From the IMG/VR virus record IMGVR_UViG_3300009508_000011, positions 124,001-188,000 of that record: DNA of 64,000 nt; one strand, written 5' to 3'. This document shows, piece by piece, positions 4,196 through 36,157 of the stretch; the stretch's first letter is position 1, and each line of letters opens with the position of its first letter. The position numbers and the translations under genes were made by a program. Below the pieces are notes generated by a model. That model ran no database searches. It was given only the letters and a program-made list of their open reading frames with translations, and had not been told where the DNA came from.

Positions 4196-4210
4196 GGGAG
4201 GTAAAAGCAA

Positions 4211-5089: not shown

Positions 5090-5110
5090 CTGATTGATTT
5101 AATCACATCT

Positions 5111-5176
5111 CTGGGAGTCCTTAGGGACTCCTAGTTATGCCGCATGGACAAAAAAATAAAGGGAGCCGAAGCTCCC
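5111..5176. terminator. Pair of terminator hairpins between convergent operons
   Basis: CTGGGAGTCC-TTA-GGGACTCCTAG (5111-5134). GGGAGC-CGAA-GCTCCC (5161-5176) is preceded by an A-tract, i.e. a U-tract on the minus strand. Confidence 0.75.
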
Positions 5177-5180
5177 GATG

Positions 5181-5930
5181 TTAGATTGTACTACTGAGTG
5201 GGTCAATGATAGTCCCTTTCTCTTTGTGTAGATTATTACTGAACTTAAAGTCAGTTGCCTTGTAGGACATAAATGGTTCTTCTACCAGATTTACCCATCC
5301 GGATGTACACTCTTGAGCTATGGTGTATTCCTCACCCACTTTCAAGTATCCATCACTTCTGATACAAATAGCCTTTCGTAGTAGAGGGCCGTCTATAGTC
5401 GTCCCTATCGGTACAAAGATACATTCGATAAATGGGTTATCTAATCTCTCTAAGTTCAATAGAGGATGTCCTATGGACTCTAGGAACGCATTTATCTCCA
5501 CATAGACTTTATGTTTACTATCTAACAGGGCTTTATATACACCCTCGTCGAGTTCTGCCTGTACGTAGAATACATCAAGTATGGCTCTGGCATCATTTGA
5601 CTTTAATAATTCACGATACTTATTAAAGGTTCTTACATCGCGATATGATAACCAGATAGCCATGTCTATAAACGTATCGTATTCGTTAGGGACACTACTA
5701 AAGCTCTTATGTAACTTTTCGGTCAGTAGAATGGTAGCCCTGGTAGTGACCGAGTTACTATAGTCGTAGTAGGTGAACTTCTCCATCGCCATACGCCAAT
5801 ATTTCTTCCAACCTGACTCATTACGCACTAAACGATTAAGTACCGCTACAGTGGCATACAGAGAGAATATTATACTACCCTGTAACATGTGTAACCAGCA
5901 CCATATGTGTGTCTTTAAATAATTCATCAT
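5181..5930 (-). CDS. Hypothetical protein
   Basis: Long ORF. Start refined to MMNYLK (ATG 5930, GGAG upstream). Confidence 0.6.
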   Translation of the reverse strand: MMNYLKTHIWCWLHMLQGSIIFSLYATVAVLNRLVRNESGWKKYWRMAMEKFTYYDYSNSVTTRATILLTEKLHKSFSSVPNEYDTFIDMAIWLSYRDVRTFNKYRELLKSNDARAILDVFYVQAELDEGVYKALLDSKHKVYVEINAFLESIGHPLLNLERLDNPFIECIFVPIGTTIDGPLLRKAICIRSDGYLKVGEEYTIAQECTSGWVNLVEEPFMSYKATDFKFSNNLHKEKGTIIDPLSSTI

Positions 5931-5975
5931 TACTCCAAAAAAAATAAGTGGGGGATTCCCCACTGTATTCTATAC

Positions 5976-6473
5976 TTAATCTTCGTCGCCTTCGTTATCG
6001 TTGTCTAACGAATCGAATGCTTCTGTTTCATCAGCTTCCGACTCTTCATCGATAATGTAAAACTTAACGGAGATGTTGTACAGTCCCATATCTTTAATCA
6101 GACCAAAGGAATGTGAATGCGGTGGCTGCTTAGCTACTTCTACTCCGTGTACATCCGTAGGTTGGATATTCACTAAGAGTACGTTATCACCATAAGCAAT
6201 TTTGACATCACCATTGTTGAACTTGGTCTTCCACGTCTTCTCGTCGAAGTCTATTACGGCTTCAACCATTTCATCGTAGAGTTCTGGTAAATCATCACCA
6301 TGTACCAAATCAAGCCACATGTCCTCAACTGACTCTGGACACGCTTCTGTAACAAAACTATATACGCCAGCTGGTACTGGCACGATAGCATCTTTGTTAT
6401 TATCAAAATCTTCACCCTTATAAAAGCTAAGTATAAAGGCGGTGTTAATACTTTGTTGTTCTTCGTCCGACAT
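5976..6473 (-). CDS. Hypothetical acidic protein
   Basis: 165 aa, AAGGA RBS, Asp/Glu-rich tail. Confidence 0.7.
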   Translation of the reverse strand: MSDEEQQSINTAFILSFYKGEDFDNNKDAIVPVPAGVYSFVTEACPESVEDMWLDLVHGDDLPELYDEMVEAVIDFDEKTWKTKFNNGDVKIAYGDNVLLVNIQPTDVHGVEVAKQPPHSHSFGLIKDMGLYNISVKFYIIDEESEADETEAFDSLDNDNEGDED

Positions 6474-6513
6474 AACGTGTTCCTTTTAATTGTACGTTAT
6501 TGAAAAAAATAAA

Positions 6514-6531
6514 GGAGGACCGAAGTCCTCC
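6514..6531 (-). terminator. Intrinsic terminator
   Basis: GGAGGAC-CGAA-GTCCTCC with an adjacent A-tract on the + strand. Confidence 0.75.
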
Positions 6532-6554
6532 CCTACTCTTGCAGGTAATAAACC

Positions 6555-7025
6555 TTACTTAGCCATACCGGCGAAGTGAGACTTAACTTTAGCTAGTGCG
6601 CCAGATGGAGCACAGCTTTGAGTTTTGTGCTTAACAACTAAATAGTTTTGACGGGTTTCTTTAGTTGCAGGTGCACCATTACGGCCAGGGATTGTTACTT
6701 CGCGAGCACGGTCCATTGAGGCAGCCATTTTGTCACCGAAGAACTTAACCGCAGATGATGCAGCTTTAACGTCTTTACTTTCGCCGAAGATGTCTTGAGC
6801 CATTTCACCAGTTGCATAACCAAGAGCGGCTAACGTAACCTTTTCTTCGTCTTTAAAGCCTTTAGCCATTTTGGCAGTCATGCCTTCAGGAAGATTTGCT
6901 TCAAATACAGATTGTATTGCTTTTTGGTCTACGTTGATGATGCCTTCACCAGCATGGGTCATGTGCTTACGGAATTCTTCTGCGCGGGCTACTACGTTTG
7001 CTGGTACTTGATTTTCATTTGACAT
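6555..7025 (-). CDS. Conserved phiKZ-like hypothetical protein, probably early and highly expressed
   Basis: 156 aa with strongly biased codons, its own promoter motif and terminator, and a 'NLPEG.T' segment recalled from phiKZ-like small proteins. Confidence 0.7.
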   Translation of the reverse strand: MSNENQVPANVVARAEEFRKHMTHAGEGIINVDQKAIQSVFEANLPEGMTAKMAKGFKDEEKVTLAALGYATGEMAQDIFGESKDVKAASSAVKFFGDKMAASMDRAREVTIPGRNGAPATKETRQNYLVVKHKTQSCAPSGALAKVKSHFAGMAK

Positions 7026-7099
7026 AATGCTGTCCTTTTATTTCTCATTGATTAAAGATTATTAATATACATTCGAATGTATAGAGTAAGTTCTCTATG

Positions 7100-7121
7100 C
7101 ACTAGGATGATATGTGCGTGA
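7100..7121 (-). promoter_or_regulatory. Putative early promoter (virion RNAP)
   Basis: TCACGCACATATCATCCTAGTG on the minus strand. Near-identical copies at 30909 and 50953. Core resembles the phiKZ early TATATTAC motif. Confidence 0.65.
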
Positions 7122-7189
7122 AATTATCTTAACTCCACTTATAGCCTAGTGTACATATAAGAGTTTGTGTGTGTATTTTTTTACCTGCT

Positions 7190-7576
7190 TTAATTTGCAG
7201 CTTCTGCTTGAGATGTCCATGTATTCATAAACTCTCTATCATAGTCACCATTGCCTGCATGGTCAGTTACGAACTGAGCACAGCGTTTATTTGCAATGTC
7301 ACCTAATCCAAGTTCTTCTCCAGTTTTCATATTGTACTTGTCAAACAGTAAACCAAATAGAACCTTATCTTCTTCTGTAACAACTACGTCAGTACGGAAC
7401 TTCAGATAGTTGTTAGTCCAAGATTCAAAAGACTTATCCACGCTAGGAATACGTCCACTATAGGATACTATCCAACAAACCATAGAAAAGTCTTTCTGTA
7501 CCGTACCACTTGGTTGCGTACGTGTTACTTTACTGTACCAATCCTTAAAGGCTGGTAGATGATGTATCTCAGTCAT
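7190..7576 (-). CDS. Hypothetical protein
   Basis: 128 aa ORF whose start overlaps the stop of the upstream gene (ATGA coupling). Confidence 0.65.
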   Translation of the reverse strand: MTEIHHLPAFKDWYSKVTRTQPSGTVQKDFSMVCWIVSYSGRIPSVDKSFESWTNNYLKFRTDVVVTEEDKVLFGLLFDKYNMKTGEELGLGDIANKRCAQFVTDHAGNGDYDREFMNTWTSQAEAAN

Positions 7577-7932
7577 AACTCCCCCATGTATTCAAATGGT
7601 ATCCCTAGAGACTCACAGACTCTTTGGAATATATCTTTTAAAATAAACCTATGGCAGAAATTGCCAGAGGGACAATAACAACCAATGGCTATGGTTTCTT
7701 TAGAGAGTAGGTTAACCCACTCTTCTTTGTTGTTAGAATAACTATCGCGCATCAACTCGTAAAACCGTTCAGTGTATTCATCTTCGGTTATTAGCTTTGA
7801 TTGATACTTAGCCAATAGAGGCCATGTCGGTGCGAAGATTTTATTACCACTTTTAACTGTAATGTCTTCAAAGTGTATATCTAACTTTTTAGCCACCCGC
7901 CAACTTTGTACCCGTATTGTGTATAGTTTCAT
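7573..7932 (-). CDS. DUF488-family (YeaO-like) protein
   Basis: Motifs DITVKSG...FAPTW, Y.ERFYELMR.S and terminal GCYCPSGNFCHR. Start refined to MKLY (ATG 7932, GGAGG). Confidence 0.7.
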   Translation of the reverse strand: MKLYTIRVQSWRVAKKLDIHFEDITVKSGNKIFAPTWPLLAKYQSKLITEDEYTERFYELMRDSYSNNKEEWVNLLSKETIAIGCYCPSGNFCHRFILKDIFQRVCESLGIPFEYMGEL

Positions 7933-8001
7933 AAAACCTCCTAACACGTCATAAGAGAGACACCGTATAGATGCCTCTCTAATATAGTACGCAGTGAAGC
8001 A

Positions 8002-8715
8002 TCAAACCTTACCTATATAGAAAGCTCTAGTCGTATCGTACGCTAGGGCAATCCATCCAACATTTTCTCTGTATATCACGTTACCTAAAACTAAACCATC
8101 CTGCATAGACTCATTTACCATGGAAAGTAATCCATTAAAGAACTCTTCAGCTTCTCTATCCTTAAGTAGTATACCATCTTGTTCCCTAGATTTGTCATAT
8201 AACTCATCATCGGAATCTCCTTGGTAATACCTATCAGGGTTTTGTAGTAAAGGTTCATTATGGTAAATGCGACTAACTATCATATTGCGGTCAAAACAAT
8301 CAGATACTTTTGATGTAGGTAAATCATATCTAGTTCCGACACGGTCAGTGTATGGGAATCTAAAAATAATTTCTTGCTTCAAAGTCCAGAATTTATCTTC
8401 AGTCATTGCGATAGCTGCATGTTTAGTTATGTTAGGGTAATCGTGTTCACGTAATGCGAATCCAGAACCTGCGTCTAGGTCTTCCATAGATATTAAAGTA
8501 CTGAGAGGTGGGTTCTCACCACCATTGGGAAACTTCTGAGGTACTGTCAGTTGTTTATAGTTCTCAATTAATATCTGCGTAATTCCATCAAACTCATTAT
8601 CGGTTAGGAAACTGTCTAAGTCAGGACGTAGGTAATATAGGTAAGATGCCATTAGCCAGATACGTGCTGCATGGTTTACGTTATCTGACGATACTGTAAA
8701 TCCATCGTGTATCAT
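8002..8715 (-). CDS. Protein with N-terminal NAD+-ligase domain Ia-like (Nlig-Ia) module
   Basis: ASYLYY.RP....LTDNEFD.I...L resembles the YY..D.P.ISD.EYD motif of LigA subdomain Ia. No ligase catalytic core follows. Confidence 0.55.
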   Translation of the reverse strand: MIHDGFTVSSDNVNHAARIWLMASYLYYLRPDLDSFLTDNEFDGITQILIENYKQLTVPQKFPNGGENPPLSTLISMEDLDAGSGFALREHDYPNITKHAAIAMTEDKFWTLKQEIIFRFPYTDRVGTRYDLPTSKVSDCFDRNMIVSRIYHNEPLLQNPDRYYQGDSDDELYDKSREQDGILLKDREAEEFFNGLLSMVNESMQDGLVLGNVIYRENVGWIALAYDTTRAFYIGKV

Positions 8716-8719
8716 AATG

Positions 8720-9298
8720 CTACCCTGTTGCTTCTAACTCATTAACTGCCTGCTCTGCTTCAATGATATCCGTAGCTGCTATGATAGCCAACCGTGAACG
8801 CATGTGTTCAGAATCAAAGAAGCATGTTTCAGCCATCCAAGGTAATAACTCATTGATGTAATCTTCTTCATCGTAGTTATCTGGTAGTAGCTTTGGCATC
8901 GCCATCCACACTTGACCTATACGAGTCTCAGGGTCTTGTTGACTGAACTCCTTAGCCATTGTGTAGTTAGCTGCCATAGCCATACCATCTGAGTTACCAG
9001 AACTTACTGTTAATGAATCTACATCAACTGTATATTCATCATTACCGTGGTCATGGACGAAACCGTAAATTACAGTCCAGTCGTGTTCTACATACTGTAG
9101 ACATTGAGATATTGCTTCAGCTAGCATTTCCCTATCTTTAAGACTAGTAAGTCCCTTAAGCATGTGTTCCATACCGACTATACTAGTTGATTCCAGAGCT
9201 GTTCCACCGATAAAGCGTAACTTACCGCCTCTTCTTTTTAACAGTCCTTGTGCCTTGCGCGCATAACGCTGGGCCTGTGCTTCATTGTTTTTCGCCAT
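8720..9298 (-). CDS. Hypothetical protein
   Basis: 192 aa with RBS (GAGG). Confidence 0.7.
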   Translation of the reverse strand: MAKNNEAQAQRYARKAQGLLKRRGGKLRFIGGTALESTSIVGMEHMLKGLTSLKDREMLAEAISQCLQYVEHDWTVIYGFVHDHGNDEYTVDVDSLTVSSGNSDGMAMAANYTMAKEFSQQDPETRIGQVWMAMPKLLPDNYDEEDYINELLPWMAETCFFDSEHMRSRLAIIAATDIIEAEQAVNELEATG

Positions 9299-18175: not shown

Positions 18176-19810
18176 TTACAATACCTTTTCTGAGCCAAAG
18201 GTTAGACCACGTAGAGTCCAATCGATGGTATCTGTACCAAACATCTGTAAACCACCGCGAGGGTCTATATAACCAGTAGGTTGGTCAAAGTACTTATGGA
18301 TTTCTGCTTCCGCATCGTCCGATAGTAAGAAGTTACAACTTACGGTATCGCCATCAAAGTCGGCACCTAGACCAACTAGCCTGTTAGGGTTTACACCTAT
18401 AGTGTCGAAGAACGGAACTCCATGTCTAGGGAATTCGTAAGCGATATGGTCATCACCTATCTGTTCCCATTGGTCATCAAGTTCATGTAGGATATCACCC
18501 TCAACAGTAGTTTTAAGATATACTGTAGATGGGTAAGTAGAACCAAGGCCAGTAATCGGATAACGAGTAACTGTACAAGTCAAGCGATTCCATTCCTTAT
18601 ACCCTGCTAGATATAAAAACTCAGCGTAGGTAATAGGGTGGACGTTCTCTTTGCGACTAGGTAGCATTCTATCGTATTCGCCTGGATTAAGGATACGGAA
18701 GCTAACACCATCTTTATAGATTAATGCTAGGTACTTCCCCTCTACCAAAATAGGCTTATGGCGAATTGTTGCATTACCGTAATAGTTAATAAACTTCTCA
18801 AGCCCTTCAACAGTAGCCCATCTATCCATAGTGTCTGTAGATACATTGACCCAGACAGTCTTTCTAGTTTTACGGTCTACTAGCGGTACATTATTAGAAC
18901 CAGTGAATATCTTAGATAGATGTCCTTTAGTCAACCAGTTAACAGCTAAAGGTAGAACACCCTTTGCAGTCTGGTATAACCCCACTACTGTATCAGTTGA
19001 ATCGATAGAGCGTGGTGAATCTAAATCATCGGTACCAACATCCATACTGGTGATTACATTACGAGTACCGTTAAAGATTCTACGTGAACCCCATTTAGCC
19101 TGAATGAAACCTTTCTTACCAGTTAGGAAGTTTTCGATATGTTCATAGATTGCATTAACTGCTGTCTGTAGAGAATAACGAGAACGGTCGTATACTGGGT
19201 CATTGGTATTGCCTGCACCGACCATAATGGTATTTGCTACAGATAGAACCTTACGATACATATCGTTTATTTCATCTTCCTGTACATAACCATCTTCGGA
19301 GATTTGTATCTCCCTTAGTCCTGCTGGTAACACTAACCATTTATCAACGGTAGCGTTGTTTCTGTAAGTGTTAACAACTTTAATTCTGAGGTTACGCTGG
19401 TCTGAGTTACTTTCTTGTAACTTCAAGTCTTTAAAGTATTCCATAAAGAAAGCAAAACCAGTACGTCCCTCTATTTCGTCAGAGGCTACAAAGTCTTTAT
19501 CTTTAGGTACCCACTTAGCATATTTCTTACCTGAGATGATATCACCGTACAATGCTTTTATTCTTGTAAGGTGTCTGTGAATTAACGGATGTAGAACACT
19601 AACCTTTAGGTCTATGAAACTAAATCTATTGTTACGTTCTTTAGTGCCGGTAGCACCAAATGTTGAAACAGAATATAGCCCATCTTCATGGAAGTTAGTT
19701 GTACCGCCATCGTATATATCGGAAACCTTTATTGGTTTCATAGCGGCGGAATTCTGACCCGTTAGCTTTAGCAGTTCAACGTTAAACGGCAGCTTGCTTA
19801 TTTGTGTCAT
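18176..19810 (-). CDS. rpoC: Virion RNA polymerase beta' subunit, catalytic part (phiKZ gp180-like)
   Basis: Catalytic GADFDGD. Also R.F..IDL....LHP, LP.GLR and GKKGFIQ.KW.SR.IF.GTR. Confidence 0.92.
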   Translation of the reverse strand: MTQISKLPFNVELLKLTGQNSAAMKPIKVSDIYDGGTTNFHEDGLYSVSTFGATGTKERNNRFSFIDLKVSVLHPLIHRHLTRIKALYGDIISGKKYAKWVPKDKDFVASDEIEGRTGFAFFMEYFKDLKLQESNSDQRNLRIKVVNTYRNNATVDKWLVLPAGLREIQISEDGYVQEDEINDMYRKVLSVANTIMVGAGNTNDPVYDRSRYSLQTAVNAIYEHIENFLTGKKGFIQAKWGSRRIFNGTRNVITSMDVGTDDLDSPRSIDSTDTVVGLYQTAKGVLPLAVNWLTKGHLSKIFTGSNNVPLVDRKTRKTVWVNVSTDTMDRWATVEGLEKFINYYGNATIRHKPILVEGKYLALIYKDGVSFRILNPGEYDRMLPSRKENVHPITYAEFLYLAGYKEWNRLTCTVTRYPITGLGSTYPSTVYLKTTVEGDILHELDDQWEQIGDDHIAYEFPRHGVPFFDTIGVNPNRLVGLGADFDGDTVSCNFLLSDDAEAEIHKYFDQPTGYIDPRGGLQMFGTDTIDWTLRGLTFGSEKVL

Positions 19811-19882: not shown

Positions 19883-22800
19883 ATGTCCGACGATTATGAC
19901 ATCGAAGATGATGGCTTTGATAGCTTTGATGATTTCGATGCTCCTGATTTCGACGGTGATGTCGGGGGCGGAAGTAAAGACCGTACACCCATCACGGTGG
20001 CGGCTACTAGCTTCACCGAAGCAGCTACTAGTAACCTATTAAGTGTTAACGCTGCGCAACGCATTGCCAGAAAGGGCTTACCTAAAGGATATAGCGAAGC
20101 TGCCGACCTTGTCGACGATGTAGCATTTGAGGCTTCTGACCTATACGATAAAGCCGAGAAAAGGTTAGAACCTGCTATTAAATCTGCCAAAGAAGCTACT
20201 CGTGGTCTTCTCCCTAAAGCTGAAGGTATTTTACCGAAAGGCGTCTACGAGAAAATAAACTCTTGGTCAGAGGACGATTCACGTCGTGGTAGTAATGTAA
20301 ATGCGGATGAGGAAAGTATAAGTACTGCCCTTAGTAGCATCTTTACTACGCAGATGGAAGAACAGGAAAGGGATAAGCAAGAAGAAAGAGTTCAGGGTGC
20401 GTTTAAAGACCAAGTCGAGAACCAACGACATGAACAAAGCGTAGATAAACTTTCACTTATCCAACAGTCTATGTCTAGACTTGTAGGGTATCAGGATAGT
20501 ATTACCGCTGCTTACCAAAAGAAATCCCTTGACTTACAATTCCGTCATTATTTTGCTGCTCGTGATTTACTCAAATTACAAACTGCTAGTAACACTGATG
20601 TAATCACAGCGTTAAACGATATCAAAACAAACACTGGTTTACCTGACTGGGTTAAAACTCAGAACTCAGAGAACTTCCAGTCTATGTTACAAGAACGTCT
20701 TATGGGCGGGACTGTTGATAACGTAAGTGACTACATGCAAAGCTTTCGCACTAATCTGATTAGTGGCGTTAAAGATAAAGTAATGGAGACAGTCGGTGAA
20801 GTAGCTGACGGTATCAGTGAAATATCTGGCGGTATTACACAGTTAAATGAAGCCTCTGAAATGATGGGTGGAATGGAAGATGGTCCTAAGGATTCTGGAG
20901 CTACTAAAGCTGCTGGCTTTGCCGGTGATGCTGCAGGTGGTGCCATATCTAATAAAATCATCGGTATGGCTGGTAAAGCCTTACAGAAAGAAACTGGGGC
21001 TAGTAAGTACATTGTAGAGAAAGGTCTAGCTGCTTCTAACATGGTTCGCGGTGCTGATGGTAAACTTAAAGAGTTTATCGACACTGCTGATGATAGAGAT
21101 GGCATTGCTGGTATGTTTGGTAGATTCCTTAAGGAAGCTGCCCCTACTCTTAATACTAGACCTGAAGTATTGCAGAATTTATCTAAGGATGCTACTGCTA
21201 GTGTTCAATGGGATGTATTGTCCCGTAGGACATTAATAGAAATAATTCCTGAGTACTTGGCACGCATTACCCAGAATACTGAATCTATGGCTACGGGTCA
21301 ACCAGCTGAGAAGATGGTGTTCAGTAAACTTAGTGAACGGTTTGTCACTGAGGGTGAGGCTGTTGCTGAAGCTACTGATAAGTTTGTTAAGCGTTCTGAA
21401 ATTACCGACTATCAAGAAAGGAATCAAAAGCTACTGAATAAAATATTTGGTGATGCTAAGATATCTGAAGAAGCAAGAGCAGTTATGTCCGAGCAGATTC
21501 ATACAGACCTTGACCGTGGTTGGAATATAGACCCTCGTCGTTATGTTGAGACTGGTGCATTCGAAAATAGATTTGACCGTGATGCAGTTGGTGAACTTCA
21601 GGAATTCTTCCGTGATAAGTTCAAGGCTAAAGACGTAGGTGAGGGCGGTAAGGAAGACTGGGAGTTTGATTTAAGCGAACAGAACCTGAAACAGATTGGA
21701 AACATCTTCAATGAAGGTAAGAATCTACAACAGGTTATTCCTAACATGCAAGGGGCTATTAACGAGTTCGTAGGGACTGGTGATAAAGACTTGTTACGTT
21801 CTACAGGATGGATTGATGATACATCGGGTAAAGACCAATTTAATCTGGAAAGAATGAATGGTTTACTCACTGGTCGTTTGTCTCTGGATGACCTACAGTC
21901 TGAATGGGATAGGTACTCTTTAAAAGAGGAACGTAAAGAAAATAGTACTAAGTGGAGAGAACAGGACAGAGGTGAGTGGCAATTGGGAGACCAACCACAG
22001 ACACCTACAGTTGAACGTACTCGTTCAGTTGAGCAATCCGTTACTCCAATGGCTGGTAAAGACTTAGATATAGTTTCACAACTTACTAGGGTACTTAACC
22101 AACATGCTGACAACAGTAAGGGTAGTTTGGATAAGTTATCATTATTAGTTAGTACTGGTACTGAAGCCCAAACTCTAACAAGTCAACAAGTAGGACTCCT
22201 AACGGAAATCCGTGACATACTTGCTACTCAACAGGTCAATGGTCTTTCTGCTGAAGAATCGGCAATGGGTGCTGAGCTACTTAAGAAATTAGGAGCTGGT
22301 GCTGGTATTGACCAACCATCACTGATGGGTAATCTATCTAGTAAAGTTATGGGTGCTGGTAAAGCTGGTATCGATATGCTTGGTAGTTACTATGGAATGT
22401 TGGGTAATGCTGCTGGGTCTGCCTTAAACTTTGCTAAAGAGAAAGGTTCTGCCGCACTAGGTTACTTAGGTGCTAAGAAAGATACCGTTGATGTATTCAT
22501 TGCCGGTATTAAGAAACCTGCTCTTAGGGCTGACTTTATAAAGGCTGGTAGATATGTCGATGTTGCTACTGGTAATGTCATCACTAACCTTAAAGATATA
22601 ACTGGTGCTGTTAAGGACTTGTCCACAGGTAATCTAGTTATAACTGAAGAAGACTATGAAAATGGTATTTTCGATGGTTCTGGTGAATCTTTAATCAGTA
22701 GACTTGGTACAGGTGCTAGAGATTTAGTATCTGGTGGTGTAGACATGCTAGGTGGTTACTATGGGTTCCTATTCAAGGGTGCTAGTAGTATCATTGGTGG

Positions 22801-25800
22801 TGTGAAGGAAAGAGCCATTGGCTTAGACCGTAAACTTAAAAACCAAGTCGATGTGTATGTTAAAAGTCGCATGGGGGATGGCCCTGCTTTATTAAGGACT
22901 AAATTACTACGTGGTGCTTACTTCGATAAGGATGGTAATTCGATATTCTCCATTGGGGACATCGATGGACCTGTCTACGATGAAGAAGGTAACATGGTTC
23001 TTACCGATGAAGATATTTCAGCTGGATTAGTTGACCCTCAGGGTGAAGAGATTCAAATTGCTGGATTATTCGGTAACGGCGTTGGTATGATTGGTTCTGG
23101 TATTGGGTTAGCAAAGACTGCTGGTTCTAAAGTGTGGGAAGCCTTAAAGGGTTACTACTCTGGAATTGGAAAAGCTGGTAAGAGTCTGCTAGATAGATTT
23201 AAGGGTGGTATTCCATCTATGGGTGGCGGTGATGTTGATGTAATGAACATCAGTGCTAACACAGTTTACCTTAATGGTAACATCCAACAATCTCCTGCGG
23301 AAGCTGCTGGTACAGCTGCACCTACCGTTAACGAAAATGTTAGCGATATTGGGGAGCAGTTGAAAGGTACTGCTACAAACATCAAAGACCGTGCTACTGA
23401 AGAAATAAGCGTTGCTGCTTCAAAGGCTAAAGATGTTGCCGATAAGGCTGTCGACAAAGTCAAGTCTGTAGATACAACCAAAGCTGAAGAGACTATCAAG
23501 GATGTTAAGAACAAAGCTACTGACAAGCTTGCTCAGGCTAAGGATAAACTACTTGGTAAGGAACTCGGTGAGGATACTGTATTAGTTGGTGATGCTGATG
23601 GTAACGTTAGTATTAAGACTGAGAACAATACAATCCCTGCTGGCGATGGTTCTACCAAAGGCTATATGGCTTCATTGCTAGCTTACTTCCATGGTAAGGA
23701 TGACCGTGAACTGAATGACACCGACGGTGATGGTTTCAGGGACGGTGGTTGGAGAAGTAAACTCTTCGGTAAAGATGAAGAGGAAGACGGAACCGACAAG
23801 GGTGATGGTCAATCTGAAACTAAACCTAAAGGAAAAGGTATGCTAGCTGGTTTAGCTGGTGCACTTGGGTTTGGTGGAGATGATGATGACGGTGGTAGTC
23901 TGGCTGGTGATATAGCATCTGAAGCTGCTGGTGAAGTTATCGGTGATAAAATATCCGGTAATGGTAAAGATGAAGATGGTGGTCGTAGAAGACGCAACGG
24001 TCCTAAGGTTAAACCAAAGGGTCGTATGGGTCGAGCATGGCAAGCCATTAAAGGTGTCGGTAGTGGGGCTAAGAAATTAGCTACGTCTGGTAAAGGCCTT
24101 GGTCTACTAGGTGGGACTGCTGCTACTATTAGTACCGCAGGTGGAATGCTCTCAGGGGCTGGTGGTTCTGTAGCTACTAAGATGGCTGCTACATCAGGAC
24201 TTAAGAAAGCCGCACTGTGGGGACTCAAGGGAGCATTAGGTTTAGCAGGTGGTATCTTAGCTGCGCCAGCAGTTGGAACAGCCTTAGCGATAGCCGGAGC
24301 TGCTTATACGGCATATGAAGTATTTAGCTTCTTTAGTAACCGTGAAGGCACTGAGCCATTGGAAGAATACCGCTTCCGTCAGTATGGTTTAGACCCAGAG
24401 GACAGTAGTCACCGTTCATTCATTCGTCAGTTAGAAGATGAAGCAATTGACCATGTTAATTATCGTGGTCAAGAGGGAACTGAGAATAGTCTAGATTTAC
24501 CAGAGGACTTCCATGATGACATTCTGGAACTATTGAATATAGACCTTAGTGTTCCTTACGAAGAAGACCCAGAGAACTCTAGACGAGCAAGTGCTTACGG
24601 TCAGTGGTTCAATAACAGATTTAAAGAGGTATTCCTTTTACATCATGGTATTTCCATGGCGTTGGACCCCGATGTTGATTTGTTGGACATTGATGATGAG
24701 TTAGATGACTCTAAGAAGTTAAAGTTTACTAAGGGAGCTTACTATCCTAACGATGGAACTGGTCGCAGCCCTTACTTCATTCCAGCAGATATGATGGAGG
24801 ATTATGAATCTGATGTCGGTTACGACAAGATTGATGAGATGAAGAAAGGTCTCATGGAAGAGTACAAGGAAGATGCTGAAGGCGAAGAGAAGACCAAAGA
24901 AGAAGGTTCTAGTTTCTTAAGTAAATTAGGAACAGCTGCTTTAGCGGTGACTCCAGTTGGTGCTTCATTAGCACTTAAGAAAGTCATCAGCGATAAACCT
25001 AAAACGGAAGACAAGGTTGCTGAAGTAGTTGAGGGTGATGGTGGAAAGGAAGTAGTTACTGAAAGAAAAAGAGCTGACTACGACGCCATAAAGGCAAAAG
25101 CCCTGTCCCGAATGTCCGATAAAACTAGGCAATATATAGAAGGTAAAACTGAAGAACGGTCTGCTAAGGCTGGTACTGAAGCAGTTACTAAACCACCTAT
25201 ATCTACAGCCACTGCTGTGAAGCGTAAGTTGAAGACTTCTAAGGTCTCTGGTAAGAGCGGGTTTATAATGCCCACTGATGGAAGAATAACTTCTAACTTT
25301 GGTAAGAACACCAACTCCGATACTGGTGAGGTTACTTTTAATTCTGGTATAGATATCGTTGCTCCTAAGGGAACAGAGGTATTGGCTACTCAGGGTGGGG
25401 TGATAACTCGTAGAGGATACTCTCGCAATGATGGTAATGTTATCTACATCGATAATGATGATGGTACACATAGCCGTTACGCTAATCTTGACAAATTCGA
25501 AGCTGGCTATACGGTTGGTGATAGAGTTGAACAAGGGGCTAAAATTGCAGAGGTTGGTGACACTGGTTGGGTTACTAGTCCAAGACTACACTTCGAGGTT
25601 CGTAAAAATGCGCACGATAAGAAATCTGCTGTAAATCCACTTGACCTATTCAAGGGTTCAGTTGGAACTAAGGCTAAGGAACAAGTCGCTGCTGCTATTA
25701 AAGAATCTAAAGAGCAAGTTAAGGTTAGTAAGACGCATGACCAGAAACGTGAGAACGTATCACGTAAGACCACTCCTTTAGTTAAACCTAGTTTAATGGT

Positions 25801-26293
25801 CCCTACTCAGGTAGGTACTAACACTAAACCAAGTTACACTGAAGATACCATTGCTGTAGCAGATACTGACACAGTAGTGGCAACTCCTAAGTCCAAACTT
25901 AACATGGCTCCCGCGAGTCCTATTAGGAAAGGAACTAAGGAAGATAGTGTTGTAGTTGAAGGTGAAGTAATTCAGCAGAGACGTGCACAGTTAAGTCAGG
26001 AGAACGCTAACGTTCGTAGTGAAAAGCAGTTAGAGGCTATCGGCATGTTAATGTCGGAACAGTTGAAGACTCAGCAACGAATGGTTGACGTACTACAAGA
26101 GGTGGCTACCAATACCAAGGCTACGGCTGAAGGTGTACATAAGCAACCTCAATCGACTACTATCGAGGGTGAAGCAACCCAAGTTAAAAAGCCGGTACAA
26201 CCTAACTTATCAGTGAAGCAACTAAGTGGTCTAATGAACCAAGGTAAATCTAAATCAGTTTCTTACCCTCTACTTATGGGTCGAAACAAGTAA
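19883..26293 (+). CDS. Giant tail protein (tape-measure/lysin-like, phiKZ gp181-like) with degenerate M23 domain
   Basis: 2136 aa, divergent from the vRNAP operon as in phiKZ. Helical and Gly/Ala-rich segments, a hydrophobic AAPAVGTALAIAGAAY stretch, and an M23/LytM-like domain at about 25260-25620. Confidence 0.8.
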   Translation: MSDDYDIEDDGFDSFDDFDAPDFDGDVGGGSKDRTPITVAATSFTEAATSNLLSVNAAQRIARKGLPKGYSEAADLVDDVAFEASDLYDKAEKRLEPAIKSAKEATRGLLPKAEGILPKGVYEKINSWSEDDSRRGSNVNADEESISTALSSIFTTQMEEQERDKQEERVQGAFKDQVENQRHEQSVDKLSLIQQSMSRLVGYQDSITAAYQKKSLDLQFRHYFAARDLLKLQTASNTDVITALNDIKTNTGLPDWVKTQNSENFQSMLQERLMGGTVDNVSDYMQSFRTNLISGVKDKVMETVGEVADGISEISGGITQLNEASEMMGGMEDGPKDSGATKAAGFAGDAAGGAISNKIIGMAGKALQKETGASKYIVEKGLAASNMVRGADGKLKEFIDTADDRDGIAGMFGRFLKEAAPTLNTRPEVLQNLSKDATASVQWDVLSRRTLIEIIPEYLARITQNTESMATGQPAEKMVFSKLSERFVTEGEAVAEATDKFVKRSEITDYQERNQKLLNKIFGDAKISEEARAVMSEQIHTDLDRGWNIDPRRYVETGAFENRFDRDAVGELQEFFRDKFKAKDVGEGGKEDWEFDLSEQNLKQIGNIFNEGKNLQQVIPNMQGAINEFVGTGDKDLLRSTGWIDDTSGKDQFNLERMNGLLTGRLSLDDLQSEWDRYSLKEERKENSTKWREQDRGEWQLGDQPQTPTVERTRSVEQSVTPMAGKDLDIVSQLTRVLNQHADNSKGSLDKLSLLVSTGTEAQTLTSQQVGLLTEIRDILATQQVNGLSAEESAMGAELLKKLGAGAGIDQPSLMGNLSSKVMGAGKAGIDMLGSYYGMLGNAAGSALNFAKEKGSAALGYLGAKKDTVDVFIAGIKKPALRADFIKAGRYVDVATGNVITNLKDITGAVKDLSTGNLVITEEDYENGIFDGSGESLISRLGTGARDLVSGGVDMLGGYYGFLFKGASSIIGGVKERAIGLDRKLKNQVDVYVKSRMGDGPALLRTKLLRGAYFDKDGNSIFSIGDIDGPVYDEEGNMVLTDEDISAGLVDPQGEEIQIAGLFGNGVGMIGSGIGLAKTAGSKVWEALKGYYSGIGKAGKSLLDRFKGGIPSMGGGDVDVMNISANTVYLNGNIQQSPAEAAGTAAPTVNENVSDIGEQLKGTATNIKDRATEEISVAASKAKDVADKAVDKVKSVDTTKAEETIKDVKNKATDKLAQAKDKLLGKELGEDTVLVGDADGNVSIKTENNTIPAGDGSTKGYMASLLAYFHGKDDRELNDTDGDGFRDGGWRSKLFGKDEEEDGTDKGDGQSETKPKGKGMLAGLAGALGFGGDDDDGGSLAGDIASEAAGEVIGDKISGNGKDEDGGRRRRNGPKVKPKGRMGRAWQAIKGVGSGAKKLATSGKGLGLLGGTAATISTAGGMLSGAGGSVATKMAATSGLKKAALWGLKGALGLAGGILAAPAVGTALAIAGAAYTAYEVFSFFSNREGTEPLEEYRFRQYGLDPEDSSHRSFIRQLEDEAIDHVNYRGQEGTENSLDLPEDFHDDILELLNIDLSVPYEEDPENSRRASAYGQWFNNRFKEVFLLHHGISMALDPDVDLLDIDDELDDSKKLKFTKGAYYPNDGTGRSPYFIPADMMEDYESDVGYDKIDEMKKGLMEEYKEDAEGEEKTKEEGSSFLSKLGTAALAVTPVGASLALKKVISDKPKTEDKVAEVVEGDGGKEVVTERKRADYDAIKAKALSRMSDKTRQYIEGKTEERSAKAGTEAVTKPPISTATAVKRKLKTSKVSGKSGFIMPTDGRITSNFGKNTNSDTGEVTFNSGIDIVAPKGTEVLATQGGVITRRGYSRNDGNVIYIDNDDGTHSRYANLDKFEAGYTVGDRVEQGAKIAEVGDTGWVTSPRLHFEVRKNAHDKKSAVNPLDLFKGSVGTKAKEQVAAAIKESKEQVKVSKTHDQKRENVSRKTTPLVKPSLMVPTQVGTNTKPSYTEDTIAVADTDTVVATPKSKLNMAPASPIRKGTKEDSVVVEGEVIQQRRAQLSQENANVRSEKQLEAIGMLMSEQLKTQQRMVDVLQEVATNTKATAEGVHKQPQSTTIEGEATQVKKPVQPNLSVKQLSGLMNQGKSKSVSYPLLMGRNK

Positions 26294-26349: not shown

Positions 26350-28296
26350 ATGAGCGGTTTAAAAGATTCGTCATGGCTACGACAAGCATTCATACTTCCG
26401 AGTACTGAAAAGGCTATCACTGCCAAAGATAATTTTAATCGTAGTTACAGTGCAGCTTTTAATAAGTTTACAGATACTACCCCTGGTGGTAACTTTACGA
26501 TTAACAATCCGCCACAAGCATGTCGGAATGCCGATATTAAAAACATAGCACTCAGAGACTATCTGGGTAGACAGAACATCAAGGCATCCAACTGTAAAGG
26601 TATGGGGCGTTTCTATAGTGAAGCGTATGATGATAATTCTGTAAAGGTTCACCTTAGTTTTGGTGTTCCTGAATTCAACAGTATAACTAGATTCTTTTCT
26701 AACTTCTACGACCCTGAGATGGGTTCTATGGCTAGAACTGGTGAAACAGCAGGGCTTAGTTATTCATTAGGTAAAGCCTTGGGTTGGTTAGTATCAGCAC
26801 CGTTGATTCCTTTCGTACTTGCCGGTTCTTTAATTAGATACTTAAGTGGTAAGCCTAATAGTAAATTCTATTATGTCAAGCCTACCATGGGTCCTTATTG
26901 GAACGCCGTAAACTTAATGGCTAATAAGTTAGCTGTTAATATTGGTATACAGCCTGGTGTATTTGGTAGTAGTACTACTGAAGAGATTGTTGCCGGTATG
27001 GGACAAACAGCTGGTAAAGCTAAACGTGCCGATTATTCCAGTGATACCCCAGGTGCTAGTTGGGATGACTATACTAAAATACTACCAGATGTCTTCAGAC
27101 GTGAGGGTGGTATAGACGTATACGCTATGGCTACTAGGGCACAACGCATTTACGATGCGCAATTAAACGCACAGATAAAAGCCATTGAGGGAGCTGCTAC
27201 TGAAGCAGACCTTGAAGCTAAACTTGCTGCTATTGCTGGTGGTAACTTCGATAAGAATGTTAACAACAAAAATATTCGTGACTACACAGAGAACTATCGT
27301 AAGTCTAGTCTTGCTAAAGTTAAGGATGCCGAAGCTAGAGAGAAAGCAGCGGCTGGTGGTGAAGAAGTACTTAAGTCTGACGACTCAAGCTTTACTGACT
27401 ACCTACAGGCTGAGCTACGAGATGGTTCTAATTGGGTAGCCTTTCGTTTAGATGAAGTTGGTAGCATTGGTGAGAGTTTCAATAACTCTACTAAAGAACC
27501 AGGCATCGCATCTACTATCAATGGTATTTCTAGTAATGCTAGGGATATGAAAACAAACGCTATGAACTTTAATCTAGGTGATGGTGTTGTTGGTGAAACT
27601 ATTGGTGCGTTTAAAGATGCTATCGTTAGCTTTGCTCAGGGTGCTCTAGATGGTGTAGGTCTAAGTGGTGTTGCTGTTTTAGGTGGTGGTGCTATGGCAG
27701 ATATTCAGAATGTGTGGGATAGTTCTTCAGCTAGTCTTCCGTCTGAATCCTTTACCATTCAGTTAAGAAGTCCTTATGGTAACAAGGTAAGTCTTTTCCA
27801 GAATCTTTACATTCCATTGTCAATGATTCTTGCTGGCGCTTTACCTCTATCTACAGGACCTAGTTCTTATACCTCACCGTTTATGTGTCAATGTTTCGTT
27901 CCGGGACGTATGCAAACTCGCTGTGGTATGATTACAGACTTGAGTATTACTCGTGGTACTTCAAATGCTGGATGGAGTGTTGATGGGTTACCTACTGGTA
28001 TTGATATAACATTTACCGTTACTGACATGTCCTCTATTTTACATGTTCCTCTAGATGAGCGAGCTGGTATTCTAGATGACGACAATGCCTTTAATGATTA
28101 CATGGCTATATTAAGTGCCTTAGGAGTAGCTGAACAATTCTACCCTACTGCTAAACTTAAGCGGGCGTGGGCTACTAAAGTACGAAGCTTCGAGAGTATG
28201 TTCTCGTATGGTAGAACTGCTCAGTGGGCTGCTGGTACAATGCCTGGTAAATTATTATCAGCATTCTACCGTGGTGGTGCTAGTATTAGTAACTAA
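26350..28296 (+). CDS. Baseplate/tail structural protein, phiKZ gp182-like
   Basis: 648 aa after the gp181-like gene. Motifs KFTDT..GGN..IN.PPQ, L..PYGN..S and G.I..LSITRG. Confidence 0.7.
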   Translation: MSGLKDSSWLRQAFILPSTEKAITAKDNFNRSYSAAFNKFTDTTPGGNFTINNPPQACRNADIKNIALRDYLGRQNIKASNCKGMGRFYSEAYDDNSVKVHLSFGVPEFNSITRFFSNFYDPEMGSMARTGETAGLSYSLGKALGWLVSAPLIPFVLAGSLIRYLSGKPNSKFYYVKPTMGPYWNAVNLMANKLAVNIGIQPGVFGSSTTEEIVAGMGQTAGKAKRADYSSDTPGASWDDYTKILPDVFRREGGIDVYAMATRAQRIYDAQLNAQIKAIEGAATEADLEAKLAAIAGGNFDKNVNNKNIRDYTENYRKSSLAKVKDAEAREKAAAGGEEVLKSDDSSFTDYLQAELRDGSNWVAFRLDEVGSIGESFNNSTKEPGIASTINGISSNARDMKTNAMNFNLGDGVVGETIGAFKDAIVSFAQGALDGVGLSGVAVLGGGAMADIQNVWDSSSASLPSESFTIQLRSPYGNKVSLFQNLYIPLSMILAGALPLSTGPSSYTSPFMCQCFVPGRMQTRCGMITDLSITRGTSNAGWSVDGLPTGIDITFTVTDMSSILHVPLDERAGILDDDNAFNDYMAILSALGVAEQFYPTAKLKRAWATKVRSFESMFSYGRTAQWAAGTMPGKLLSAFYRGGASISN

Positions 28297-36073: not shown

Positions 36074-36157
36074 CTGCTGTTCCTTATAATTTTACTTTAA
36101 TTTAGCTAAATAGCTTTACACATAGGTAGTGCTATTTGAGTATTTTTTAATAATGGT

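What the first reader, a model, noticed from the sequence alone, without database searches (positions are those of the whole stretch)
25261..25620. Catalytically dead M23 (LytM) domain in the gp181-like tail protein
Seen: FIMPTDGRITSNFG...FNSGIDIVAPKGTEV...YANL...GDRVEQGAKIAEVGDTG...SPRLHFEVR. Known: active M23 peptidases need HxxxD, the YxHL His and HxH. Here these read NSGID, YANL and RLH, so three key His are lost (two as AAT codons, one base from His). phiKZ gp181 instead carries a lytic transglycosylase, which I do not see here. Inference: a peptidoglycan-binding module, or an EnvC/NlpD-like degenerate LytM that could recruit host amidases during injection.
Basis: partly seen in the sequence, partly recalled or inferred. 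Interest (0 to 1): 0.6.

Follow-up and report, generated by a model that had tools for sequence, protein, structure and literature searches.

The report
Disabled cell-wall-cutting domain in phage tail protein

Summary
ORF 19883-26293 (+), 2136 aa, is a homologue of phiKZ gp181, flanked by gp180 and gp182 homologues. It carries a Pfam M23 domain (E 4e-25) where gp181 has its SLT domain. The motifs read NSGID, YANL and RLH. Five histidines near the active site are lost (H1811N, H1820N, H1868N, H1870D, H1901R).

It is not an error. All five protein variants of this phage species, from at least 17 contigs, carry the same residues, and the phage occurs in runs of 14 studies.

Three sister lineages (57-67% identical in the domain), four Vibrio jumbo phages and all 83 nearest M23 domains keep every histidine. 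The loss is therefore derived and confined to one lineage.

The fold looks intact: AF2 core pLDDT is above 90, and nonsynonymous change is ordinary for this protein and far below that of the adjacent linker.

Three replacements match E. coli NlpD exactly (N, D, R). However, the aromatic residue needed by EnvC for amidase activation is Asp here, and the domain has become more acidic.

Best reading: a catalytically dead LytM domain kept as a non-catalytic module. Amidase hijacking remains possible but is unsupported. This is a new variant of a known kind, of moderate interest.

The parts
19883..26293 (+). gp181-like virion (tail / cell-puncturing) protein, 2136 aa (P0001)
   Evidence: phrog_3201 'tail fiber protein' matches aa 2-1732 at E 1e-191. 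BLASTP to phiKZ gp181 gives E 2e-27 (aa 19-679) and 5e-8 (aa 1403-1678). Synteny with the gp180 and gp182 homologues is conserved.
25262..25615 (+). M23/LytM domain with degenerate active site (aa 1794-1911)
   Evidence: Pfam PF01551 E 4.2e-25. The AF2 model has mean pLDDT 82.5 with the core above 90. Foldseek gives TM 0.7-0.8 to LytM, lysostaphin, DipM and EnvC.
25307..25318 (+). Loop NTNS (aa 1809-1812), replacing the family-conserved R-V-H-P
   Evidence: Sisters and 95-99% of the 83 nearest M23 domains have R and P here. The changes R1809N, H1811N and P1812S are specific to the window's clade.
25340..25354 (+). NSGID in place of HxxxD (N1820, D1824)
   Evidence: Codon AAT against CAC in the sisters. 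His is 100% conserved in the 83 relatives. E. coli NlpD has N279 and D283 at the same columns.
25430..25432 (+). D1850 in place of the invariant Tyr of the YGN motif
   Evidence: Tyr is 100% conserved in 83 relatives. The column aligns with EnvC Y350, which is required for amidase activation (PMC10214136).
25478..25495 (+). YANLDK in place of YAHLH- (N1868, D1870)
   Evidence: Codon AAT against CAC/CAT in the sisters. NlpD has H328 and D330 at these columns.
25583..25591 (+). RLH in place of HxH (R1901, H1903)
   Evidence: Codon AGA against CAC/CAT in the sisters. NlpD reads R358-L-H360.
24840..25195 (+). Hypervariable linker upstream of the domain (about aa 1653-1770)
   Evidence: 59 nonsynonymous and 20 synonymous variable codons per 118 within the near-identical clade. 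Window 24919-25148 is replaced by 249 unrelated nt in other samples.
25658..26290 (+). Conserved C-terminal region after the domain (aa 1926-2136), no known family
   Evidence: It aligns through to the last residues in the sisters P0003 and P0004. dN/dS is 0.07-0.12 within the clade.
26350..28296 (+). phiKZ gp182 homologue (648 aa)
   Evidence: BLASTP 34% identity, E 1e-123; phrog_3181 E 1e-191.
18176..19810 (-). phiKZ gp180 homologue (virion RNA polymerase beta-subunit piece), divergently transcribed
   Evidence: BLASTP 40% identity, E 9e-120.

Best explanation
The gp181 homologue of this roughly 206-kb marine phiKZ-like phage carries a genuine M23/LytM domain at the place where phiKZ gp181 has its lytic transglycosylase. 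The domain descends from an active endopeptidase module that sister phages still have.

In this one lineage the active site has been dismantled. One of the three zinc ligands is lost (the His of HxxxD, now Asn). Both catalytic histidines are lost (the YxHL His, now Asn; the first His of HxH, now Arg). Two further histidines, the RVHP loop and the invariant Tyr of the YGN motif are also replaced. The beta-sheet core is kept.

Shown: homology, the derived state, fixation in the population, a confident fold prediction, and a substitution pattern concentrated in the groove loops.

Inferred from established M23 chemistry and from E. coli NlpD, which has lost a subset of the same residues: the domain no longer cleaves peptidoglycan.

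Inferred with less certainty: it is retained as a folded, non-catalytic module of the ejected tail protein. Most simply it grips the peptide stems of the wall, or a protein partner, in the old substrate groove while the tail crosses the periplasm. The protein itself no longer cuts the wall.
For: - **Domain and motifs:**
- **gp181 homology and synteny:**. The SLT domain in phiKZ gp181 sits at the equivalent position.
- **Ancestral state is active.** P0003/L006, P0004/L011, P0013/L020 and four Vibrio jumbo-phage homologues keep HxxxD, YAHL and HLH. His is 100% conserved at all four columns in the 83 nearest M23 domains.
- **Fixation.** P0001, P0002, P0006, P0007 and P0008 all read N/N/R. They come from at least 17 contigs, and the phage is held by 20 runs in 14 studies.
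- **Rate.** On the window's branch M23 dN is about 0.20, against 0.017 and 0.051 on the sister branches. In the N-terminal 1780 aa the three branches are comparable (0.196, 0.125, 0.099).
- **Where the changes fall.** Of 31 clade-specific substitutions, 15 lie in aa 1795-1821 and only 2 in the core aa 1837-1867.
- **Within the clade.** The domain has 4 synonymous and 2 conservative nonsynonymous variable codons. The binomial p against neutrality is 0.027. That level is ordinary for this protein, while the adjacent linker has 59 nonsynonymous variable codons per 118.
- **Fold:**
- **NlpD comparison.** NlpD reads N279, D283, D330, R358 and H360 at the window's N1820, D1824, D1870, R1901 and H1903.
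- **Literature.** HxxxD and HxH are needed for zinc binding and catalysis, and degenerate LytM domains remain functional as binders or regulators (PMC11323569, PMC9662197, PMC10336132).
Against: - No activity, metal content or binding was measured, so inactivity is an inference.
- The within-clade selection test rests on only six variable codons.
- The domain is not more conserved than the rest of the protein: 44% of 118-codon windows have as few nonsynonymous changes.
- Selection to keep a domain foldable inside an essential 2136-aa virion protein would give the same signal without any binding function.
- Asp1824 and His1903 remain, so a weak or altered metal site cannot be excluded.
- The location of this protein in the virion and its ejection are extrapolated from phiKZ gp181 (PMC5380687).
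Confidence: 0.55

Rival explanations
1. Functionless relic. Wall cutting by this protein became dispensable, because virion-associated lysins are often non-essential and the phage has other wall enzymes. The active site decayed, and the domain persists only as a folded spacer between the essential N-terminal body and the conserved C-terminal 210 aa.
For: - The loss is confined to one lineage, and its closest relatives are intact.
- The domain evolved about three times faster than expected on this branch.
- Family-invariant residues beyond the catalytic ones are lost: Y1850D, R1809N, P1812S.
- The genome encodes two SLT-domain proteins with the catalytic Glu present.
- Within-clade conservation is no better than the protein average.
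Against: - The core has hardly changed across a branch with saturated dS (2 of 31 core residues).
- The within-clade nonsynonymous:synonymous ratio is below neutral, p 0.027.
- The neighbouring linker shows what unconstrained sequence in this protein looks like.
- Both SLT proteins have N-terminal signal or anchor sequences and also occur in the sister phage with an intact M23. They look like lysis enzymes rather than virion substitutes.
- No lysin gene is specific to this phage.
Confidence: 0.3
2. A phage-borne LytM factor. The dead groove docks a regulatory helix of a host amidase (as EnvC and NlpD do) or a lytic transglycosylase (as DipM does). The partner could also be one of the phage's own SLT proteins. 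Host or phage autolysins would then be switched on locally where the tail crosses the wall.
For: - Three of the five His replacements give exactly the residue found in E. coli NlpD (N, D, R), and the retained D and H also match NlpD.
- NCBIfam scores rise toward the NlpD model (60 bits against 44 and 48 in the sisters) and a DipM model (57 against 42 and 48). They fall for active endopeptidase models, for example ShyA at 50 against 62 and 66.
- DipM is the second-best PDB match by both sequence and fold.
- Identity to NlpD and EnvC is 3-5 points higher than for the sisters, even when the His columns are left out.
- DipM's dead groove binds both an amidase and SLT-type transglycosylases (PMC10336132).
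- The degenerate LytM domain of PrgK modulates an SLT-fold muramidase in a DNA-transfer machine (PMC11323569).
Against: - The aromatic residue at EnvC Y350, which is required for activation and is conserved as Y in NlpD and F in DipM, is Asp here (PMC10214136, PMC10336132).
- The domain became more acidic: net -3 against -1 and +2 in the sisters, with four new Asp. A positive groove potential is reported as essential for activation (PMC10336132).
- The score shifts come from a handful of residues.
- The host and its amidases are unknown.
- No Amidase_3 or Amidase_2 gene is in the phage.
Confidence: 0.1
3. The domain is still a hydrolase, using a remodelled site. The retained Asp1824 and His1903 together with the newly gained Asp/Asn residues would bind a metal and do the catalysis.
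For: Two of the three zinc ligands remain, and four new Asp and several Asn lie in or near the groove.
Against: Both catalytic His and one ligand are gone. NlpD has lost a subset of these residues and is classed as a non-catalytic LytM factor (PMC9662197). His is 100% conserved at these columns in the 83 nearest relatives.
Confidence: 0.04
4. Sequencing or assembly artefact, or a rare defective variant.
For: None was found. The idea rests only on the fact that close relatives keep the His residues.
Against: The same residues occur in five distinct protein variants on at least 17 contigs from independent projects (TARA, DRR and ERR runs). The phage is held by runs of 14 studies. There are three to five independent codon changes, one of which needs at least two base changes.
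Confidence: 0.01

Closest known systems
E. coli NlpD (LytM factor, activator of AmiC)
   Same: M23 fold with a degenerate site. It has identical residues at five formerly catalytic or neighbouring columns: N279/N1820, D283/D1824, D330/D1870, R358/R1901 and H360/H1903. Identity over the domain is 37%.
   Different: NlpD keeps the YAH His (H328) and the YGN Tyr (Y310), whereas the phage domain has N1868 and D1850. NlpD is a bacterial lipoprotein with a LysM domain that acts at the septum. Here the domain is embedded in a 2136-aa phage virion protein. Amidase activation was not shown for the phage domain.
Caulobacter DipM LytM domain (PDB 7QRL)
   Same: Second-best PDB hit by sequence (E 5e-15) and by fold. 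It is catalytically inactive, and its groove docks an amidase and SLT-type transglycosylases (PMC10336132).
   Different: DipM keeps an aromatic (F534) at the EnvC Y350 position and has a positive groove. The phage domain has Asp there and is more acidic.
PrgK LytM domain of the pCF10 type IV secretion system
   Same: A degenerate, metal-free LytM domain inside a wall-crossing DNA-transfer machine. It does not cut the wall but modulates a neighbouring SLT-fold enzyme (PMC11323569).
   Different: It is a Gram-positive conjugation protein with SLT and CHAP domains fused in the same chain. The phage protein has no SLT or CHAP domain. No sequence comparison was made.
phiKZ gp181 (virion-associated lysin of the cell-puncturing device)
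   Same: Homologous N-terminal body and Gly/Ala-rich region, the same gene neighbourhood, and a wall-enzyme module at about the same relative position (PMC5380687).
   Different: gp181 has an active SLT-type glycosidase domain. This protein has an M23 domain, and that domain is degenerate.
gp181-like proteins of Vibrio jumbo phages (BONAISHI ORF23c, vB_pir03, Yong, sm033) and the three uncultured sister phages
   Same: The same architecture, with an M23 domain near the C-terminus. The sisters are 57-67% identical in the domain.
   Different: All of them keep every catalytic histidine, the RVHP loop and the YGN Tyr.
Active M23 domains in phage entry proteins (phi29 gp13, Tuc2009 Tal, cyanophage A4 gp28 pre-ejectosome, PDB 9K2V)
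   Same: An M23 module carried by a tail or ejection protein to breach the wall (PMC9662197, PMC12002296). 9K2V appears among both the sequence and fold hits.
   Different: Those are reported with conserved catalytic residues and, for gp13 and Tal, with measured activity.

Membership tests
Peptidase family M23 (homologous domain) | Match to Pfam PF01551 above the gathering score | tested here: met
   88.2 bits against a cut-off of 28.7, E 4.2e-25; 94.2 bits in the six-frame genome scan.
Peptidase family M23 (homologous domain) | LytM-type beta-sheet fold | tested here: met
   AF2 mean pLDDT 82.5 with the core above 90. Foldseek TM 0.71-0.81 to LytM, lysostaphin, ShyA, DipM and EnvC.
Peptidase family M23 (active enzyme) | Zinc ligands: His and Asp of HxxxD plus the second His of HxH | tested here: not met
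   The domain reads N1820, D1824 and H1903, so one of the three ligands is lost.
Peptidase family M23 (active enzyme) | Catalytic histidines: the YxHL His and the first His of HxH | tested here: not met
   N1868 and R1901. Both columns are 100% His in the 83 nearest relatives.
Peptidase family M23 (active enzyme) | Peptidoglycan endopeptidase activity | not testable with these tools
   This needs a zymogram or muropeptide assay.
LytM factors (EnvC / NlpD / DipM / ActS type regulators) | M23 fold with a degenerate catalytic site | tested here: met
   The losses are a superset of NlpD's.
LytM factors (EnvC / NlpD / DipM / ActS type regulators) | Groove residues required for amidase activation (EnvC K321, V324, Y350, V353, Y401, R405) and a positive groove potential | tested here: inconclusive
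   V1853 and R1907 are conserved. H1903 and D1824 match NlpD and/or DipM. Y350 maps to D1850, so the aromatic is lost. K321 maps to V1817, but that part of the alignment is uncertain. Domain net charge is -3 against -1 and +2 in the sisters (PMC10214136, PMC10336132).
LytM factors (EnvC / NlpD / DipM / ActS type regulators) | Binds and stimulates an amidase or lytic transglycosylase | not testable with these tools
   One complex prediction with the E. coli AmiC catalytic domain gave no verdict. The host is unknown.
LytM factors (EnvC / NlpD / DipM / ActS type regulators) | Bacterial periplasmic division protein with LysM or coiled-coil targeting modules | tested here: not met
   The domain is part of a phage gp181-like virion protein. 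No LysM or other Pfam domain is present in P0001.
phiKZ gp181-like virion proteins (phrog_3201) | Homology over the N-terminal body | tested here: met
   phrog_3201 E 1e-191. BLASTP to gp181 gives E 2e-27 and 5e-8. tblastn hits in 228 jumbo-phage records.
phiKZ gp181-like virion proteins (phrog_3201) | Conserved neighbourhood: gp180-like virion RNA polymerase piece upstream (divergent) and gp182-like gene downstream | tested here: met
phiKZ gp181-like virion proteins (phrog_3201) | C-terminal SLT-type lytic domain | tested here: not met
   There is an SLT domain in gp181 and none in P0001. M23 takes its place, as in the Vibrio phage homologues.
phiKZ gp181-like virion proteins (phrog_3201) | Presence in the virion at the tail tip or baseplate | not testable with these tools
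   This needs virion proteomics or cryo-EM. It is extrapolated from phiKZ (PMC5380687).

The most novel reading that the evidence does not exclude
The dead M23 domain is a phage-carried LytM factor. Delivered into the periplasm on the ejected gp181-like protein, its remodelled groove captures the regulatory helix of a host amidase, or an SLT-type transglycosylase of the host or the phage. The phage would then open the wall by switching on another enzyme at the penetration site rather than by cutting the wall itself. The exact copies of NlpD's N, D and R residues would then be functional convergence.
Probability: 0.1. Interest if true: 0.8.

Novelty: new variant of a known kind. Interest (0 to 1): 0.45.

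Why it matters
Degenerate LytM domains are known as bacterial regulators of wall hydrolases, and active M23 domains are known in phage entry proteins. In the searches made here I found no description of a degenerate LytM domain in a phage virion protein. An IMG/VR pattern scan for the same H-to-R signature found no other viral example.

The case is useful because nature supplies the controls. Sister phages about 70% identical at the protein level carry the active-looking version of the same domain in the same protein. This allows a direct test of whether a tail-borne wall enzyme is needed for entry. It also allows a test of what a dead one is kept for, and of whether loss of catalysis in LytM domains repeatedly lands on the same residues as in NlpD.

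If it is only a relic, it is a tidy example of how dispensable virion lysin activity can be in a cosmopolitan marine jumbo phage.

Tried and rejected
- **Megablast** of the gene against GenBank phages gave no match.
- **Complex prediction** of the domain with the E. coli AmiC catalytic domain returned 'no answer' (score 0.00, controls not run). This is not evidence either way. E. coli is only a stand-in, because the host is unknown.
- **Host search.** A scan of bacterial genome contigs with the gp182 homologue found nothing. The host remains unknown.
- **Compensating wall enzymes.**
  - The genome scan found no Phage_lysozyme, GH19, Amidase_2, Amidase_3, Peptidase_M15_4 or NLPC_P60. For GH19 the search rang in none of the control genomes either, so that negative is uninformative.
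  - Two SLT proteins exist, but the intact-M23 sister phage has both as well. They are not compensatory gains.
  - Of 217 ORFs, 21 lack a homologue in the sister genome. The ten longest showed only a GNAT acetyltransferase.
- **Read laying** on 4001 bases in four runs gave only Logan contigs, and the table of differences was cut before the M23 region. No extra polymorphism data for the domain came from it.
- **Claim that M23 is the most conserved segment** within the clade: rejected. It is average for nonsynonymous change.
- **Pattern scans.** One search was mistyped by one N and so was out of frame; it should be ignored. The corrected scan hit one contig, which is a chance match and not an M23 domain.
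- **Domain-only word search** found only four small bacterial proteins.
Full report
**1. What is there**

The finding lies inside one long ORF, window 19883-26293 on the + strand, 2136 aa (P0001). The correct frame starts at 25262, not 25261; translating from 25261 gives only stops.

Pfam finds a single significant domain, Peptidase_M23, at aa 1819-1911 (E 4.2e-25, 88 bits against a cut-off of 28.7). A six-frame scan of the whole genome finds this as the only M23 domain. The motifs read:
- F-N-S-G-I-D, where active enzymes have HxxxD;
- Y-A-N-L, where they have YxHL;
- R-L-H-F-E, where they have HxH.

**2. The protein and the phage**

The window is bases 124001-188000 of a 206,117-bp IMG/VR virus record with direct terminal repeats.

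- **Homology to gp181.** PHROG 3201, the gp181 family (labelled 'tail fiber protein'), matches aa 2-1732 at E 1e-191. BLASTP against phiKZ gp181 gives E 2e-27 over aa 19-679 and 5e-8 over aa 1403-1678.
- **Synteny.** The downstream 648-aa ORF is a gp182 homologue (34% identity, E 1e-123). The divergent upstream 544-aa ORF is a gp180 homologue (40% identity, E 9e-120).
- **The lytic module.** phiKZ gp181 has an SLT domain at aa 1885-1978, about the same relative position as the M23 domain here. P0001 has no SLT hit.
- **Relatives.** tblastn finds gp181-like proteins in 228 jumbo-phage records. The nearest, in Vibrio phages sm033, Yong, pir03 and BONAISHI, also carry M23 near the C-terminus.

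The lytic module of this protein family is therefore interchangeable, and 'gp181-like with M23 in place of SLT' is correct. phiKZ gp181 is described as an active virion-associated lysin of the cell-puncturing device (PMC5380687).

**3. Are the substitutions real and conserved?**

The protein cluster at 90% identity has five members (P0001, P0002, P0006, P0007, P0008), found on at least 17 contigs from JGI, ENA/TARA and Logan assemblies. All five read N, N and R at the three positions. The stretch is held by 20 runs from 14 studies, mostly marine metagenomes. An artefact is excluded.

**4. Do relatives keep the histidines?**

Yes. Three sister lineages all read FH-G-ID, YAH and HLHFE:
- P0003 = L006, a 218-kb IMG/VR contig, 67% identical in the domain;
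- P0004 = L011, 65%;
- P0013 = L020, a 208-kb TARA contig, 57%.

The four Vibrio phage proteins read the same way. In an alignment of the 83 nearest M23 domains (sisters, Vibrio phages and 76 metagenome loci), His is 100% conserved at all four histidine columns.

The window's clade departs from the family consensus at 12 of 37 strongly conserved columns, while the sisters depart at 6-7. The clade-specific departures are R1809N, P1812S, H1820N, Y1850D, H1868N, S1897V and H1901R. H1811N and H1870D are also clade-specific. The domain has 3 histidines where the sisters have 8-9. The loss is therefore derived and confined to one lineage.

**5. Tempo and mode**

- **Between lineages.** Nei-Gojobori distances give M23 dN of 0.219 and 0.253 between the window and its two sisters, but only 0.068 between the sisters. 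That puts about 0.20 on the window's branch, against 0.017 and 0.051 on the sister branches. In the N-terminal 1780 aa the three branches are comparable (0.196, 0.125, 0.099). In the sisters the domain is about three times more conserved than the rest of the protein. On the window's branch it evolved as fast as the rest.
- **Where the changes fall.** They are not spread evenly. Of 31 positions where both sisters agree and the window differs, 15 lie in aa 1795-1821 (the N-terminal strand and loop leading into HxxxD). Only 2 lie in the central sheet, aa 1837-1867. dS between the lineages is saturated (above 1). A domain drifting freely for that whole time would have changed far more than 26% of its residues.
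- **Within the clade.** Whole-gene dS is up to about 0.12. The domain shows 4 synonymous and 2 nonsynonymous variable codons (F1819Y and H1911Y, both conservative). Under neutrality 77% of changes should be nonsynonymous, giving p = 0.027.
- **A caution.** This level of nonsynonymous change is ordinary for the protein: 44% of 118-codon windows are as low. It contrasts with the adjacent linker, which has 59 nonsynonymous and 20 synonymous variable codons per 118.

My reading is that the active-site region was remodelled or released from constraint while the fold has stayed under constraint. The numbers inside the clade are small.

**6. Structure**

An AF2 model of aa 1785-1925, built on an 8-sequence alignment, has mean pLDDT 82.5, with blocks of 90-94 through the core.

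Foldseek against the PDB returns M23/LytM structures at TM 0.7-0.8. These include active enzymes (LytM, lysostaphin, ShyA, EnpA), dead regulators (DipM 7QRL, EnvC 4BH5 and 8C0J) and the cyanophage A4 pre-ejectosome protein. By sequence, DipM is the second-best PDB hit (E 5e-15).

**7. Comparison with the known dead LytM domains**

*In favour of an NlpD-like state*
- Aligned with E. coli NlpD and EnvC taken from the K-12 record, the window's N1820, D1824, D1870, R1901 and H1903 are identical to NlpD N279, D283, D330, R358 and H360.
- Three of the five histidine replacements therefore landed on NlpD's residue. The set of catalytic residues lost here contains the set lost in NlpD, which is classed as a non-catalytic LytM factor (PMC9662197).
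- NCBIfam scores shift the same way. Against the NlpD model the window scores 60 bits and the sisters 44 and 48. Against one DipM model it scores 57 against 42 and 48. Scores for active endopeptidase models fall, for example ShyA at 50 against 62 and 66.
- Identity to NlpD and EnvC is 3-5 points higher than for the sisters, even when the five His columns are removed. This is weak evidence.

*Against an EnvC/NlpD-type activator*
- EnvC residues required for amidase activation are K321, V324, Y350, V353, Y401 and R405 (PMC10214136).
- Y350 is conserved as Tyr in NlpD and Phe in DipM (PMC10336132). It is Asp1850 here, although the sisters have Tyr.
- A positive groove potential is reported as essential (PMC10336132). 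The window's domain gained four Asp and has net charge -3, against -1 and +2 in the sisters.

**8. Other wall enzymes of the phage**

- Six-frame scans find two SLT-domain ORFs outside the window. P0014 is 194 aa with a signal-like N-terminus and a Q-E-S catalytic motif. P0015 is 313 aa with an N-terminal anchor, an SLT domain and two LysM domains.
- Both also exist in the sister phage that has an intact M23. They are ancestral and look like lysis-stage enzymes, not replacements in the virion.
- No phage lysozyme, Amidase_2, Amidase_3, M15_4 or NlpC/P60 was found. The GH19 scan was also negative but is uninformative, because it rang in none of the control genomes.
- Among the 21 ORFs that lack a homologue in the sister genome, the ten longest include nothing wall-related.
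- The degenerate M23 is thus the only recognisable wall-enzyme-like module in a predicted virion protein of this phage, within the limits of profile searches.

**9. Interpretation**

- **Shown:** a real M23 domain in a gp181 homologue; its catalytic histidines replaced; the state derived, lineage-specific and fixed; the fold predicted with confidence; the changes concentrated around the old groove.
- **Inferred from M23 chemistry:** the domain is catalytically dead (I put this at about 0.9). HxxxD and HxH are needed for zinc and catalysis (PMC11323569), and NlpD serves as a precedent.
- **Inferred with less certainty:** it is kept as a non-catalytic module, binding wall peptide or a partner protein. 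The best explanation as a whole gets 0.55.
- **Main rival:** a foldable but functionless relic (0.3).
an EnvC/NlpD-like factor recruiting host amidases, or, following DipM and PrgK, modulating an SLT enzyme. This stays open at about 0.1. The NlpD-identical residues speak for it, and the Tyr-to-Asp change and the acidic shift speak against it.

**10. Novelty**

Degenerate LytM domains in bacteria and in a conjugation machine are known, and so are active M23 domains in phage entry proteins (PMC9662197, PMC10336132, PMC11323569, PMC12002296). Full-text searches for a degenerate LytM domain in phages found nothing relevant, and the M23 review lists none. A pattern scan of IMG/VR for the same H-to-R signature with the same spacing found only a chance match. 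I rate this as a new variant of a known kind.

**11. Limits**

- The host is unknown.
- The complex prediction gave no verdict.
- Only contigs, not raw reads, could be laid, and the difference table was cut before the domain.
- The selection test within the clade rests on six variable codons.

Noticed in passing
window about 24840-25195 (P0001 aa ~1653-1770); replaced segment at window 24919-25148: The linker just upstream of the M23 domain is hypervariable within an otherwise near-identical phage population, with 59 nonsynonymous and 20 synonymous variable codons per 118. In other samples (L008/L009, runs X10 and X17) 228 nt are replaced by 249 unrelated nt, which looks like a swapped cassette.
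   Followed up: partly
L006:2729-9137 (sister phage IMGVR_UViG_3300002038_000006): The sister's gp181-like gene is read as two overlapping ORFs, 2729..3757 (342 aa) and 3714..9137 (1807 aa). This is a frameshift or an assembly error near codon 340.
   Followed up: no
outside the window: G000:C1 about 94038-94622 (+) = L012:1360-1944, and about 35960-36901 (-) = L013:1153-2094: There are two SLT-domain proteins with N-terminal signal or anchor sequences: P0014 (194 aa) and P0015 (313 aa, SLT plus two LysM). They are probably the lysis enzymes. Both are shared with the sister phage.
   Followed up: partly
window 24089-24322 (P0001 aa 1403-1480): A Gly/Ala-rich hydrophobic stretch that aligns with phiKZ gp181 aa 1299-1352. 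It may be a set of membrane-inserting segments of the ejected protein.
   Followed up: no
outside the window: G000:C1:90947-91480 (+) = L116: A GNAT acetyltransferase is the only recognisable gene among the 21 ORFs that have no homologue in the sister genome. Several other clade-specific ORFs flank the two SLT genes.
   Followed up: partly
proteins P0010, P0011, P0012 (ENA metagenome contigs): Three of the four small homologues found by the domain-only search are themselves degenerate LytM domains. They read F-N-S-G-I-D, Y-A-H-L and G-L-H-F-E, so they share the H-to-N change with the phage domain.
   Followed up: no
whole window / G000: The phage is cosmopolitan. The M23 stretch is held by 20 public runs from 14 studies (marine, seawater, aquaculture, sand and sponge metagenomes), and by two runs labelled with a single organism, which might point to a host.
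   Followed up: no
window 19883-19970 (P0001 aa 1-30): The protein has a strongly acidic, Asp/Phe-rich N-terminus (D-D-G-F-D-S-F-D-D-F-D-A-P-D-F-D-G-D) that is conserved in P0004. Its function is unknown.
   Followed up: no
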